Shown here: positions 4,412 to 6,286 of the stretch, in pieces
Numbering within the stretch: position 1 is the stretch's first letter
How the letters are laid out: every line of letters starts with the position of its first letter
Notes under the pieces: model-generated
Seen by the model: only the letters and a program-made list of their open reading frames with translations
Database searches by the model: none
What the model was told of the DNA's origin: nothing
Position numbers and translations under genes: made by a program
IMG/VR virus record: IMGVR_UViG_3300042516_005475
Location: 166,048-230,047 of that record
Length of the DNA: 64,000 nt
Direction: 5' to 3' (one strand)

Positions 4412-4440
4412 TGGCGTTCCTTCAAAAAAGCAGCCATAAT
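4411..4440 (+). promoter_or_regulatory. early-type promoter driving the ncRNA cluster
   Basis: gtggcg-ttcc...-CATAAT followed by GATTGTAGAAAAT, matching promoters at 26128, 27200 and 27485. Confidence 0.65.
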
Positions 4441-4554
4441 GATTGTAGAAAATTTAGAACGGTAGTAACGTTCAACAGGTGCTGACAATACGTAGAAAAA
4501 GATAGTGTTGGCTAAGTGCGAGTTGTAGTGCCTCCAGCCTGTGTTCTTTTCAAT

Positions 4555-4873
4555 GCGATCGTAGCTCAACGGTAGAGCATCGGCCTTTAATAGGAGCGCT
4601 TATAGAGTGATCTATAAGATGAACCGAGCCATATGCGGGGACCTCCTTAGAGCCTTGAGTACCGTAAGGTAAAAATCTCAAGGATTGGACAATCCGCAGG
4701 AAACCAGTAGATTAGTACGCTGTTGGTCATAAATTGGGATCCTCAGAGACTTTACGCTTGGCATCTCTAAAAGAGATGATGATAAAGTCCAGACTACAAC
4801 GGAAACGGCTAGTGAAAACTAGAGTAGTAAGTTAAGCCGGGTGTTGTGGATTCGAATTCCACCGGTCGCACCA
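4555..4873 (+). tRNA. trnK: tRNA-Lys(UUU) interrupted by a group I intron; exons 4555-4587 and 4832-4873
   Basis: Acceptor GCGATCG/CGGTCGC, D arm GCTC/GAGC, anticodon stem TCGGC/GCCGG, spliced loop CT-TTT-AA, T arm GTGGA-TTCGAAT-TCCAC, encoded ACCA end. Confidence 0.9.
4588..4831 (+). ncRNA. group I intron, 244 nt, no ORF (IC3-like)
   Basis: P ATGCGGGGAC 4633, Q AATCCGCAGG 4691, R CCTCAGAGACTTTA 4741, S GATGATAAAGTCC 4778; P7 GACTTTA/TAAAGTC; P3 CCGAGC/GCTTGG; P1 CTT/GAG; terminal G 4831. Confidence 0.92.
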
Positions 4874-4972
4874 TATTTGCCAACAGGGCTCAGCTTGATG
4901 CTTTGGACAGATAACAAAGTCTGATAGAGAGGCTAGTGCAGAAAATCCTGTATAAACTGCACATTAATTTTT

Positions 4973-5047
4973 CGGCAAGAGTCCTGATCAGACATGGTAA
5001 AGTGCCTGCAGAGGGCACGAGGCAGGTTCAAGTCCTCCATCTTGCCG
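4973..5047 (+). ncRNA. tRNA-like structured RNA without a normal anticodon arm
   Basis: CGGCAAG/CTTGCCG stem, TGGTAAA D-loop-like segment, GTGCCT/GGGCAC hairpin, AGG-TTCAAGT-CCT T-arm. Confidence 0.6.
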
Positions 5048-5070
5048 TTCAATTTAGTTCTTTTACATTT

Positions 5071-5162
5071 GAGTTGGAGCTGTATCCGCAAGGACAGCAT
5101 GGTGTTAGTGAAAGCATTGGAAATGCAGTCTTTCACCGGACTACGACGGTTCCATCCAACTC
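5071..5162 (+). ncRNA. structured RNA with the same architecture as 4973-5047
   Basis: GAGTTGG/CCAACTC, GCAA-tetraloop hairpin, ATGG/CCAT, GTGAAAG/CTTTCAC. Confidence 0.55.
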
Positions 5163-5169
5163 TTTAAAT

Positions 5170-5311
5170 TTATCTGTAGCTCAGCGGTAAGAGCAGAGTT
5201 CCTAACTATGGGTAAAGCCCTTAAAAATCTTATGTTAGGTCGTAAAATTGCCTTGTACTGATATTTTACAAGTTGTAAAAGTAGCCGTTGGTTCGATTCC
5301 AACCAGATGAA
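5170..5311 (+). ncRNA. tRNA-like RNA with a ~90 nt structured segment replacing the anticodon/variable region
   Basis: Acceptor TTATCTG/CAGATGA, TA-GCTC-AGCGGTAA-GAGC D arm, GTTGG-TTCGATT-CCAAC T arm; middle has CCTAAC/GTTAGG and CTTGTA/TACAAG. Confidence 0.7.
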
Positions 5312-5406
5312 CAATTACGCCCGGAGAATACCCGATAAATAGGACACTTAATTTGGTTCCCCATCAGAGGATTAAAACGCCAATTAAAAGACCGGCGACA
5401 ATTTTA

Positions 5407-5539
5407 TGCCAGGAGAGCGCGAGTAATACGCCTTCAGCTAGATGTAGTAATTAGCGTCTAGCAACGAGAAGAACAAAGGAAACCGAAGTAATTACCGGCT
5501 AACCTTTTATAGGTGGATAAAGAACCACCCCTGACACCA
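5407..5539 (+). ncRNA. CCA-ending tRNA-like RNA
   Basis: TGCCAGG/CCTGACA (one mismatch) then CCA; GGTGG/CCACC hairpin in T-arm position; internal GCTAGATG/CGTCTAGC stem. Confidence 0.45.
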
Positions 5540-5566
5540 ATTTAACAAGACAGATAGACGTGTAAG

Positions 5567-5621
5567 TAAGCTTTGGAAGCCACCCATAAGTGGGTGACTG
5601 GGTTCGATTCCCAGGAGCTTA
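5567..5621 (+). ncRNA. 55-nt minimal tRNA-like element
   Basis: TAAGCTT/GAGCTTA acceptor, TGGAAG linker, CACCCA-TAAG-TGGGTG hairpin, CTGGG-TTCGATT-CCCAG T arm; inside an AACAAG/CTTGTT outer stem (5544-5678). Confidence 0.6.
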
Positions 5622-5739
5622 TTAGGGAACAAACTGCCATCTCGACGAGAGAGCGTAGGTGAAATCCTGAAACTTGTTTCAAATTTTATTTGCAGTTCCT
5701 GTTACTTTCAGTTAAACTAAACGTAGTAAAAATAAAAAA

Positions 5740-6042
5740 ATGAACAAAGAAATCGTTAACATCGTTCGGGACCGCAAGGGTAATCCTCGTGGTTATGTTG
5801 TCGCTACTAAGCTCGAGAATGGTAAGGTTGGCCTTGGCTGGTCTTATGTTAATGTTAAGGCTGGAGATCGCTTCGACAAGTATCTCGGCCAAAAGATCGC
5901 CATGAATCGAGCCTTTACTGGTACTGATAAGTTTGTGCCTCGTGACGTGATGAAGGTGATTGATCGGGTGTCTTCTCGCGCTGTGAAGTACTTCAAGGCT
6001 CCTATTGATGCCTACCCTCAGCAAGTTGTTACTGTTGCGTAA
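5740..6042 (+). CDS. hypothetical early protein
   Basis: Downstream of TTGCAG-17-TAAACT promoter; GWSYVN...DRFDK.LG.KIA. Confidence 0.65.
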   Translation: MNKEIVNIVRDRKGNPRGYVVATKLENGKVGLGWSYVNVKAGDRFDKYLGQKIAMNRAFTGTDKFVPRDVMKVIDRVSSRAVKYFKAPIDAYPQQVVTVA

Positions 6043-6057
6043 ACAATTGCTAATGTT

Positions 6058-6264
6058 ATGATTAAAATCCTTGTTGATCTCGATACTGAAGGTGACAGCT
6101 TCAGAGGTAATATGTCTGGAGAAGTCACCAAGATCTCTAGGGATATTGGTGAAATGATCTTGGAAGTAATTAGCAAAGATGCTACTTGTGTATCGCGAGA
6201 TATCATCGATGCTGGAGATAATAAAATTGGTGTAGTAACTATTACTAATCCTTGGAGGGAATAA
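6058..6264 (+). CDS. hypothetical protein
   Basis: 68 aa ORF co-oriented with neighbours. Confidence 0.55.
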   Translation: MIKILVDLDTEGDSFRGNMSGEVTKISRDIGEMILEVISKDATCVSRDIIDAGDNKIGVVTITNPWRE

Positions 6265-6286
6265 CTAAAAGGGCATAAATATCTTT

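What the first reader, a model, noticed from the sequence alone, without database searches (positions are those of the whole stretch)
5170..5311. tRNA body with a ~90-nt structured insert in place of the anticodon arm
Seen: canonical acceptor, D and T arms, but the middle holds CCTAAC/GTTAGG enclosing a small hairpin, and one ATTTTAC that can pair with either of two GTAAAA copies or via CTTGTA/TACAAG. No group I cores here; 3' end is ACAA not ACCA. Inference: an unknown intron type, a conformational switch on a tRNA scaffold, or a non-translating mimic.
Basis: partly seen in the sequence, partly recalled or inferred. Interest (0 to 1): 0.6.

Follow-up and report, generated by a model that had tools for sequence, protein, structure and literature searches.

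The report
Conserved phage tRNA-like RNA with inserts
A 142-base gene among a jumbo phage's tRNA genes keeps a tRNA's acceptor, D and T arms but carries two conserved insertions where the anticodon loop and variable loop should be; it belongs to a previously undescribed family of probably non-decoding tRNA look-alikes in related freshwater phages, and is not a decayed tRNA.

Summary
Window 5170-5311 (+) scores as a tRNA (Rfam 36.4 bits, threshold 29), with 86 nt where the 17-nt anticodon arm should be.

It is not decaying. Twenty-five distinct homologues were found, one per phage record, all inside tRNA arrays of related freshwater jumbo phages. Acceptor, T, CCUAAC/GUUAGG and second-hairpin helices all show compensatory changes. 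The insert core is the most conserved part.

Removing two segments in silico leaves a 72-74 nt cloverleaf. These are a 38-nt hairpin between anticodon-loop positions 32 and 33, and 25-37 nt between positions 43 and 44. ARAGORN reads 19 of the 25 products as tRNA-Thr. So the gene is a tRNA-Thr-type scaffold with two insertions.

It does not look like a working decoder:
- the leftover anticodon stem is poorly kept (3.6 of 5 pairs);
- it starts UU, where the phages' real tRNA-Thr genes start GCC;
- none of the 25 encodes CCA, against 88-96% of neighbouring tRNAs.

An intron reading is not excluded (about 0.2).

Best reading: a stable, non-decoding tRNA-scaffolded RNA displaying an invariant hairpin and two Thr-anticodon-like strands, possibly a protein decoy. 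The function is inferred, not shown.

The parts
5170..5176 (+). Acceptor stem, 5' strand (UUAUCUG). U1 and U2 are invariant in the family.
   Evidence: Pairs with 5304-5310. Pairs 3-70, 4-69 and 5-68 covary. Pair 1-72 is U-A in 9, U.G in 1 and mismatched in 15 of 25.
5179..5194 (+). D arm (GCUC, loop AGCGGUAA, GAGC).
   Evidence: Rfam tRNA alignment. The stem is invariant in all 25.
5195..5201 (+). A26, then GAGUU (the 5' strand of a vestigial anticodon stem), then C32.
   Evidence: Pairs 4 of 5 with AAUUG at 5246-5250. The family mean is 3.6 of 5, the best of all registers but weak.
5202..5239 (+). Insertion 1: a 38-nt hairpin sitting between anticodon-loop positions 32 and 33. The boundary is ambiguous by 1 nt. 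It contains helix P-a (5201-5206 with 5234-5239), then either GGG/CCC (5210-5212 with 5218-5220) or AUGGG/CUUAU extending P-a, and an A-rich strand at 5221-5233.
   Evidence: It is always 38 nt long. P-a covaries: CCUGAC/GUCAGG in L026 and L027, CCCAAC/GUUGGG in L043. In the homologues found without using the core as bait, 33 of its 39 positions are invariant. The inner pairing is unresolved because nothing varies there.
5240..5245 (+). Motif 1, UCGUAA. Read as U33, C34 G35 U36, A37, A38, it is a tRNA-Thr anticodon-loop 3' part.
   Evidence: Only position 34 varies (C, U or A). G35, U36, A37 and A38 are fixed, except in L072.
5246..5250 (+). AAUUG, the 3' strand of the vestigial anticodon stem.
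5251..5281 (+). Insertion 2 (31 nt here, 25-37 nt in the family), between positions 43 and 44. It consists of a linker C, hairpin hp2 (5252-5257 with 5267-5272, loop 5258-5266) and motif 2, UUGUAAAAG (5273-5281).
   Evidence: hp2 has unrelated sequences in different lineages but is always a hairpin; 5 of its 6 pairs show double changes. Motif 2 is invariant except for G to A in L072, which carries the same change in motif 1. RNAalifold alternatively folds 5272-5276 with 5281-5285 as a small wobble-rich hairpin.
5282..5286 (+). UAGCC, at the place of variable loop 44-48.
   Evidence: Nearly invariant.
5287..5303 (+). T arm (GUUGG, loop UUCGAUU, CCAAC).
   Evidence: Rfam alignment. It covaries to GAGGG/CCCUC in L010 and L036.
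5304..5311 (+). Acceptor 3' strand (CAGAUGA) and a variable discriminator (A). It is followed by CAA, so no CCA is encoded.
   Evidence: None of the 25 variants is followed by CCA. In contrast 23 of 24 tRNAs in this genome and 98 of 111 in relatives' arrays encode it.

Best explanation
Window 5170-5311 is a functional, single-copy gene for a roughly 142-nt tRNA-like RNA. It belongs to a family confined, so far, to the tRNA arrays of a clade of freshwater jumbo phages.

Shown:
- It has a true tRNA acceptor stem, D arm and T arm.
- A 38-nt, almost invariant hairpin interrupts the anticodon loop between positions 32 and 33.
- A second insertion between positions 43 and 44 holds a hairpin of free sequence followed by UUGUAAA.
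- Removing both in silico leaves a tRNA-Thr-type cloverleaf, so the gene derives from, or is built on, a tRNA-Thr-type scaffold.

Inferred: the RNA is cut out of the array transcript by the tRNA-processing enzymes that recognise the acceptor and T-arm module (RNase P at the 5' end, a 3' tRNase). It persists as a stable RNA with both insertions in place, and it does not decode. The scaffold supplies processing and stability. The payload is the invariant hairpin plus two strands that each read U-N-G-U-A-A, like the 3' part of a tRNA-Thr anticodon loop, each leaving the 3' end of a helix.

Most likely mode of action (a weak inference): a bivalent anticodon-loop mimic that binds and titrates a protein reading such loops. 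Candidates are a dimeric synthetase such as ThrRS, a loop-modifying enzyme, or a host anticodon nuclease. That would make it a decoy or sponge.
For: tRNA scaffold: Rfam scores it 36.4 bits against a threshold of 29.

Homologues: 25 distinct copies were found by synteny, by a scaffold-only pattern and by a core pattern.

Structure: 95.8% of helix cells are paired, 12 pairs have double changes, and 0 of 500 shuffles reach this. RNAalifold independently recovers the acceptor, D, P-a, hp2 and T helices.

Selection: against L002 the element is 138/142 identical, while the spacers on either side are deleted or scrambled. Shared array proteins are only about 29-72% identical. Neighbouring proteins of the syntenic relatives are 84% and 68% identical.

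Copy number and distribution: one copy per phage record. None was found in 185,579 prokaryote species' genomes by an exact core-pattern scan, nor among isolated phages.

Scaffold identity: the double deletion gives 72-74 nt cloverleaves, and ARAGORN of 25 tRNA-Thr (CGU, UGU or AGU). Ordinary phage tRNA-Thr(UGU) genes have the same kind of anticodon arm.

Against decoding: the vestigial anticodon stem averages 3.6 of 5 pairs, while the D, T and P-a helices are fully paired, the acceptor about 91% and hp2 about 89%. None of the 25 encodes CCA, against 23/24 and 98/111 neighbouring tRNAs. Pair 1-72 is mismatched in 15 of 25 and the acceptor always starts UU, whereas the real tRNA-Thr genes of the same arrays start GCC and end in CCA. 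Thr identity rests on acceptor pairs plus anticodon bases (PMC9976931).

For a bivalent mimic: only position 34 varies in motif 1. The one lineage that changes G35 (L072) changes it in both motifs. The E. coli thrS operator is a precedent: an RNA with two tRNA-Thr anticodon-arm mimics that binds ThrRS, and changing its Thr anticodon-like sequence to a Met one re-targets it (PMC9976931).

RNA: a riverine metatranscriptome holds a 59-nt contig at depth 22.7 running unbroken from the D stem through the hairpin into motif 1.
Against: No function has been measured.

The RNA evidence is a single short contig from an RNA library. That cannot exclude DNA carry-over, and it says nothing about RNA ends or minor spliced forms.

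The motifs are not displayed in closed 7-nt hairpin loops as in real anticodon arms.

The concerted change in L072 is one lineage only (roughly a 1-in-25 coincidence).

Most homologues were ascertained with a pattern taken from the core, so part of the core's invariance is by construction. The unbiased subset shows the same, but it is smaller.

The host is unknown, so no partner protein can be named.

In the window's own lineage the anticodon stem left after excision would be good (4-5 of 5 pairs), which keeps the intron reading alive.
Confidence: 0.45

Rival explanations
1. It is a precursor of a working tRNA-Thr with a new kind of short intron. The 38-nt hairpin at position 32/33 would be cut out at the base of its helix by a protein nuclease (for example an RNase III-like cut of the 11-12 bp hairpin) or by its own chemistry. 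The ends would then be joined by an RNA ligase. Insertion 2 would stay as an oversized variable arm or be removed as well.
For: Removing homologous segments gives a tRNA-Thr cloverleaf in 19 of 25 variants. In the window-type group the resulting anticodon stem-loop is canonical: 4-5 of 5 pairs with loop C-U-N-G-U-A-A, including U29-A41 in L053 and A29-U41 in L024 where the others have G.U. The wobble position is the only variable motif base. The hairpin length is fixed at 38 nt. An Rnl-type RNA ligase gene lies 2.4 kb downstream in the window. Group I introns show that these tRNA arrays tolerate interrupted genes.
Against: No single excision gives a class I tRNA. In the larger 'GAGUA' group the stem left behind has only 2-4 of 5 pairs, although every other helix is kept. 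No CCA is encoded, the acceptor starts UU, and pair 1-72 is often mismatched. The implied anticodon does not fill a gap: several arrays already hold tRNA-Thr(UGU) alongside a UGU-type element. The only RNA-library contig across the site is unspliced. No insert-less allele was found. The site is not a bulge-helix-bulge motif, and there is no ribozyme family hit. The ligase is not linked to the element in other lineages.
Confidence: 0.2
2. The invariant hairpin, with or without the two UNGUAA strands, is a small self-cleaving or self-ligating ribozyme of a new class carried on a tRNA scaffold.
For: It has the right architecture: covarying helices around invariant internal-loop nucleotides. Some words are shared with twister ribozymes (CCUAAC, AAGCCC, an A-rich strand); this resemblance is recalled from memory only.
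Against: No match to any Rfam ribozyme family at E up to 10 in the window, nor at E up to 1 in six homologue loci. No cleavage data exist. The unbroken RNA contig across the hairpin argues against efficient self-cleavage there.
Confidence: 0.07
3. It is a conformational switch: ATTTTAC alternates between the two GTAAAA copies and the CTTGTA/TACAAG hairpin.
For: The complementarities exist in the window sequence.
Against: ATTTTAC reads ATTGTAC in the closest relatives, where the change lengthens the hp2 stem instead. It is absent in all other lineages, whose hp2 has unrelated sequence. The window MFE is unremarkable (z -1.5).
Confidence: 0.03
4. It is a dead tRNA gene with a junk insertion (a pseudogene), or a DNA-level signal.
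For: ARAGORN does not call it by default. It has no CCA.
Against: It shows compensatory changes in five helices. The core is near-invariant across phages whose proteins have diverged to 29-72% identity. Flanking spacers are scrambled while the element is kept. G.U pairs work only on the + strand RNA.
Confidence: 0.02

Closest known systems
Phage T4 species 1 RNA (rnaC), and species 2 RNA (rnaD)
   Same: A small stable RNA of about 140 nt encoded inside the phage tRNA cluster. It has an acceptor-like stem and a canonical T arm at the ends and extra hairpins in the middle. Its function is still unknown.
   Different: It is not homologous. Model R1 scores rnaC at 18 bits, below two of T4's own tRNAs (30 and 24 bits). 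rnaC has no D arm, no 38-nt core and no UNGUAA motifs.
E. coli thrS operator (tRNA-Thr anticodon-arm mimicry in an mRNA leader)
   Same: One RNA carries two Thr anticodon-like elements. It is recognised through G35 and U36, with position 34 free. Changing the anticodon-like sequence re-targets it (PMC9976931).
   Different: The operator is part of an mRNA, its mimics are closed stem-loops, and it lacks an acceptor/T module. Here the motifs are open strands on a free-standing tRNA scaffold of a phage. Binding has not been tested.
tRNA genes with group I introns (for example the tRNA-Lys at window 4555-4873)
   Same: An interrupted anticodon loop in a phage tRNA gene.
   Different: The insert is 38 nt rather than more than 200. 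It has no group I core. It sits at 32/33 after a C, not after the U that group I splicing needs (established knowledge).
Engineered 'tRNA scaffolds' for expressing recombinant RNA (Ponchon and Dardel; cited from my own knowledge)
   Same: The anticodon arm is replaced by a cargo RNA, while the acceptor, D and T arms secure processing and stability.
   Different: Those are man-made. This would be a natural counterpart, with a second insertion as well.
tmRNA, bacterial Y-RNA-like YrlA, and mascRNA (natural non-decoding tRNA mimics)
   Same: A partial tRNA fold used for processing or partner binding rather than decoding.
   Different: No Rfam or ARAGORN match. There is no conserved tag reading frame. 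The termini lie in the acceptor stem, unlike YrlA. A full D arm is present, unlike tmRNA and mascRNA.

Membership tests
Canonical decoding tRNA | 7-bp acceptor stem, D arm and T arm with the conserved loop bases | tested here: met
   RF00005 scores 36.4 bits against a threshold of 29. Covariation is seen in the acceptor and T stems.
Canonical decoding tRNA | A contiguous 5-bp anticodon stem with a 7-nt loop | tested here: not met
   86 nt stand in place of 17. No single excision restores the arm in 24 of 25 variants. The stem left after the double excision averages 3.6 of 5 pairs.
Canonical decoding tRNA | A 3' CCA, which in these phages is normally encoded | tested here: not met
   0 of 25 variants encode it, against 23/24 and 98/111 neighbouring tRNAs. 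Post-transcriptional addition cannot be tested here.
Canonical decoding tRNA | Aminoacylation | not testable with these tools
   The acceptor starts UU, whereas the real tRNA-Thr genes of the arrays start GCC. That is suggestive only.
tRNA with a group I intron | A group I catalytic core | tested here: not met
   RF00028 matches only 4577-4812, and nothing in 5170-5311 at E up to 10.
Archaeal/eukaryal tRNA intron (bulge-helix-bulge) | Two 3-nt bulges around a 4-bp helix at the splice sites, usually at position 37/38 | tested here: not met
   By inspection, a 6-bp (or 11-bp) helix is flanked by a 0-1 nt joiner and a 6-nt joiner, and the site is 32/33.
tmRNA | A detectable tmRNA fold and a conserved tag reading frame | tested here: not met
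   ARAGORN and Rfam find none. The 17-codon frame in the window is cut to ATG GGG TAA in the L016 type.
T4 rnaC family | Sequence and structure homology | tested here: not met
   Model R1 scores rnaC at 18.3 bits, below two of T4's own tRNAs (30.3 and 24.4 bits).
Known small self-cleaving ribozymes (hammerhead, twister, twister-sister, pistol, hatchet, hairpin, HDV-like) | A match to the family covariance model | tested here: not met
   No hit at E up to 10 in the window, nor at E up to 1 in six homologue loci.
thrS-operator-type anticodon mimic | Two Thr anticodon-like sequences with G35 and U36 fixed and position 34 free | tested here: met
   Motifs at 5240-5245 and 5273-5278. The variation pattern is shown.
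thrS-operator-type anticodon mimic | The mimics presented as closed anticodon-arm hairpins | tested here: inconclusive
   Motif 1 lies in a junction closed only by the weak stem. Motif 2 either is a linker or lies in a wobble-rich mini-hairpin.
thrS-operator-type anticodon mimic | Binding to ThrRS | not testable with these tools
   Not attempted; the host is unknown.

The most novel reading that the evidence does not exclude
The 38-nt invariant hairpin is a new class of short intron at position 32/33 of a bacteriophage tRNA-Thr. It would be removed by a protein endonuclease plus RNA ligase route, or by a minimal ribozyme, and would be unrelated to group I, group II or bulge-helix-bulge introns. 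The mature product would be a decoding tRNA with a giant variable arm.
Probability: 0.15. Interest if true: 0.9.

Novelty: new variant of a known kind. Interest (0 to 1): 0.62.

Why it matters
Phage tRNA arrays are usually read as codon-usage or anti-defence supplies of ordinary tRNAs.

This family shows that they also carry strongly conserved RNAs that use the tRNA fold as a chassis for another payload. It is a natural version of the engineered "tRNA scaffold", and a modern relative in kind of the still unexplained T4 species 1 and 2 RNAs.

The same 1.9-kb ORF-free stretch holds at least two more non-decoding tRNA look-alikes. Unrelated inserts also occur in tRNA-like genes of other viral contigs, so this may be a general and overlooked gene class.

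If the payload is an anticodon-loop decoy, it would be a new RNA-based counter-measure to tRNA-targeting host factors. If the hairpin is spliced out, it would be a new intron type in bacteria-infecting viruses.

The family is absent from Rfam 15, from the isolated phages searched, and from the searchable literature by sequence.

Tried and rejected
1. "It is the phage's missing tRNA-Tyr" (UUGUAAA resembles a Tyr loop, and ARAGORN finds no Tyr gene). Rejected. The genome has its own odd tRNA-Tyr(GUA) at genome position ~156,340-156,430, and relatives carry Tyr genes right beside the element.

2. ARAGORN's intron models. They give Pyl(CUA) with a 56-nt intron in the window, Thr(UGU) in L002 and Trp(CCA) in L010. 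They are mutually inconsistent, and the stems they need are not conserved.

3. Single-intron models of every length and position. None is shared across homologues.

4. Coding or tmRNA-like reading of the insert. The reading frame is not conserved.

5. A GNRA tetraloop (GUAA) with an 11-nt receptor (CCUAAG/UAUGG-like). CCUAAC is shown by covariation to pair with GUUAGG, and L072 has AUAA, so this was dropped.

6. Word resemblance to twister ribozymes. There is no covariance-model support.

7. Closest paralogue among the phage's own tRNAs. None stands out.

8. The 244-nt "skip" at 4587-to-4832 in RNA runs. The flanks differ from the window, so it comes from relatives whose tRNA-Lys has no intron. 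It is not proof of splicing.

9. Searches that gave nothing useful:
- the single-protein locus search;
- an over-specific pattern;
- a motif-2 pattern, which hit only coding false positives;
- Genome contigs;
- isolated phages;
- a search for an insert-less allele;
- literature keyword and sequence searches.

10. psbA as a host hint: absent, so the host stays unknown.

Full report
WHAT IS THERE

The window is bases 166,048-230,047 of a 230,047-bp IMG/VR virus record with about 36% G+C. The finding lies in a 1.9-kb stretch without long ORFs (4412-6286). A cREC_REC-domain gene (PF20274) lies upstream. Two small ORFs, a virion structural protein gene and an Rnl-type RNA ligase gene lie downstream.

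ARAGORN with default settings finds no tRNA in the window. Rfam places a tRNA at 5170-5311, scoring 36.4 bits against a gathering threshold of 29. Its acceptor, D and T arms align perfectly, and 86 nt replace the 17-nt anticodon arm.

The only one is in the neighbouring tRNA-Lys(UUU) at 4555-4873.

HOMOLOGUES

No close relative turned up with a single-protein locus search or a very specific DNA pattern. Relatives were reached in three other ways.

- By synteny. The downstream structural protein has metagenomic relatives of 55-93% identity, and their contigs were fetched. Seven further contigs of the same phage are 100% identical over whatever part of the 1.3-kb RNA region they cover.
 - L002 (neighbouring protein 84% identical) keeps the element at 138 of 142 bases. 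The 99 nt upstream of it are deleted and the 65 nt downstream are scrambled.
 - L010 (68%) keeps it too, but at another place in the RNA region. There the acceptor, the T stem and the second hairpin have different sequences that still pair.
- By pattern scans. Scans of IMG/VR and of the metagenome collection added more copies. In all there are 25 distinct full-length variants (alignment A1).
- Caveat on ascertainment. Searches used the insert core as bait, so invariance at the bait positions is partly by construction. The scan used only scaffold positions, and searches used synteny. All copies found in those ways carry the same core, with 33 of its 39 positions invariant.

All copies lie in phage tRNA arrays. 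There is one copy per record in the window's genome and in four other IMG/VR records, which CheckV rates as 24-36% complete pieces, that is, jumbo phages. Array-embedded proteins of these contigs are about 29-72% identical to the window phage's. The exact core-pattern scan found it in none of 185,579 prokaryotic species' genomes, and no isolated phage carries it. The host is unknown, and there is no psbA.

STRUCTURE

I counted six helices on A1: acceptor, D, P-a (CCUAAC/GUUAGG), GGG/CCC, hp2 (CUUGUA/UACAAG in the window) and T.

- 95.8% of cells are paired.
- 12 pairs have changes on both sides.
- 0 of 500 column shuffles reach either value, and sliding the partners drops pairing to 31-42%.

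Specific compensatory changes:
- Acceptor pairs 3-70, 4-69 and 5-68 take several pair types.
- The T stem is GUUGG/CCAAC or GAGGG/CCCUC.
- P-a is CCUGAC/GUCAGG in L026 and L027, and CCCAAC/GUUGGG in L043, with a G.U intermediate in L048.
- hp2 has unrelated sequences in different lineages.

RNAalifold, run without my structure, recovers the acceptor, D, P-a, hp2 and T helices. It differs in two places where nothing varies, so neither version can be tested. It extends P-a by AUGGG/CUUAU instead of forming GGG/CCC. It also folds GUUGU-AAAA-RUAGC over motif 2.

The G.U pairs fit only the + strand.

In L002, L028 and L074 the T-to-G change at 5266 breaks it and instead adds a C-G pair to hp2. Other lineages have no such segment.

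WHAT IT IS BUILT FROM

Two early leads failed.

- The tRNA-Tyr idea. UUGUAAA resembles a Tyr anticodon loop, and ARAGORN finds no Tyr gene. But the genome has its own unusual tRNA-Tyr(GUA), and relatives have Tyr genes directly 5' of the element.
- ARAGORN's forced intron models disagree between homologues. An exhaustive test shows that no single excision gives a canonical class I anticodon arm in 24 of 25 variants.

What does work is this. The strand after P-a reads U-N-G-U-A-A, preceded (before the hairpin) by GAGUU-C and followed by AAUUG. Read that way it is a tRNA-Thr anticodon stem-loop (27-31, C32 | U33 N34 G35 U36 A37 A38, 39-43) interrupted between positions 32 and 33 by a hairpin that is always 38 nt long.

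If that hairpin and the 25-37 nt between positions 43 and 44 (linker, hp2, UUGUAAARR) are removed in silico at homologous positions, every variant becomes a 72-74 nt cloverleaf. ARAGORN then of them tRNA-Thr (CGU, UGU or AGU) and L072 tRNA-Ile(UAU). The other five are read in a shifted register (four as Tyr GUA, one ambiguous). I designed this deletion, so it shows descent or design from a tRNA-Thr-type scaffold. It does not show splicing. Ordinary phage tRNA-Thr(UGU) genes have the same kind of anticodon arm.

DECODER OR MIMIC?

Five points argue against a decoder.

1. The stem that would become the anticodon stem is the one helix not maintained. It has 3.6 of 5 pairs on average: 4-5 in the window-type group and only 2-4 in the larger GAGUA group. 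Neighbouring registers score 2.7-3.1.
2. None of the 25 variants encodes CCA. In contrast 23 of 24 tRNAs of this genome and 98 of 111 in relatives' arrays do.
3. The acceptor always begins UU, pair 1-72 is mismatched in 15 of 25, and the discriminator is free. The real tRNA-Thr genes of the same arrays begin GCC and end in CCA. Thr identity uses acceptor pairs plus anticodon bases (PMC9976931).
4. The implied anticodon often duplicates a tRNA-Thr already present.
5. In four RNA libraries (contigs only), the single contig over the place is a 59-nt piece at depth 22.7. It comes from an L016-type relative and runs unbroken from the D stem through the hairpin into motif 1. This is weak. Contigs cannot show ends or rare forms, and DNA carry-over cannot be excluded.

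Points for an intron reading remain. These are the good stem in the window's own lineage, including U29-A41 in L053 and A29-U41 in L024; the fixed hairpin length; the wobble-only variation; and a ligase gene nearby in this lineage. I keep that reading as the main rival.

HOW IT MAY WORK

Shown: a tRNA chassis under selection, carrying a payload under stronger selection.

Inferred: RNase P and a 3' tRNase release it from the array transcript. In several relatives a tRNA ends 9-10 nt upstream and another tRNA-like gene starts about 8 nt downstream. It then accumulates with its insertions in place.

The payload has two copies of helix-U-N-G-U-A-A-A, and only position 34 varies. The single lineage that changes G35 to A (L072) does so in both copies. 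That is what one expects if both are read by the same factor.

The known precedent is the thrS operator, where two tRNA-Thr anticodon-arm mimics bind ThrRS, and changing the Thr anticodon-like sequence to a Met one re-targets it (PMC9976931). Class II synthetases such as ThrRS are mainly dimeric (PMC9976931).

I therefore rank a bivalent anticodon-loop decoy or sponge as the most likely mechanism. The target could be a synthetase, a loop-modifying enzyme or an anticodon nuclease. My confidence in that last step is about one in three. The role of the invariant hairpin with its A-rich strand is unexplained.

COMPARISON WITH KNOWN THINGS

The closest in kind is T4 species 1 RNA (rnaC, 139 nt), which has a tRNA-like acceptor and T arm, sits in the tRNA cluster, and has no known function. 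It is not homologous.

The element is not a tmRNA, YrlA, mascRNA, group I intron, bulge-helix-bulge intron or any Rfam ribozyme. Neither the sequence nor the family appears in the searchable literature.

VERDICT

This is a real, conserved, previously undescribed tRNA-like RNA family.

Noticed in passing
window 4555-4873: tRNA-Lys(UUU) interrupted after U33 by a 244-nt group I intron (RF00028, 70.9 bits). Relatives L002 and L010 carry the same tRNA-Lys without the intron, and L002 also has a tRNA-Lys(CUU). The 244-nt skip seen in RNA runs comes from such intron-less relatives, so it does not demonstrate splicing.
   Followed up: partly
window 4975-5047: Another tRNA-like RNA: a 7-bp acceptor, a T arm, and a 6-bp arm with a 5-nt loop (GCAGA) instead of an anticodon loop. 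It is 98% conserved in L002, and the T stem is changed compensatorily in L010.
   Followed up: partly
window 5567-5621: A mini tRNA-like RNA with an acceptor stem, one hairpin capped by a tetraloop and a T arm, but no D arm. It has a weak mascRNA-like hit (E 0.96) and a folding z-score of -2.9. It is conserved in L002.
   Followed up: partly
window 5405-5535: A non-coding stretch almost identical in L002 and recognisable in L010, with a folding z-score of -3.1. It may be a further structured RNA.
   Followed up: no
G000 genome ~156,340-156,430 (outside the window); L016:1945-2034; L019:~310-500; L024:~5738-5822: tRNA-Tyr(GUA) genes with a non-standard D arm and T loop (AGCAUUA or CGCAUUA) that ARAGORN misses. 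They often lie directly 5' of the element. The arrays also hold tRNA-Thr genes of 82-92 nt with long variable regions, and an odd tRNA-like gene 3' of the element.
   Followed up: partly
loci L105, L116, L119, L122, L134, L151, L166, L187, L190, L207: A scaffold-only scan of viral contigs found about ten other tRNA-like genes with matching acceptor ends and unrelated inserts of about 35-70 nt (by ARAGORN's forced intron models) between the D and T arms. Cargo on a tRNA chassis, or short tRNA inserts, may be widespread in viruses.
   Followed up: no
window 5208-5261: The insert holds a 17-codon ORF (ATG to TGA). It is not conserved: L016-type copies read ATG GGG TAA.
   Followed up: yes
L053:1486-1680: A group I intron (72 bits) lies about 370 nt upstream of this relative's copy of the element, so group I introns recur in these arrays.
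   Followed up: no
window 6224-6249: A weak ToxI-antitoxin-like match (18.7 bits, E 6.3), far below threshold and probably chance.
   Followed up: no
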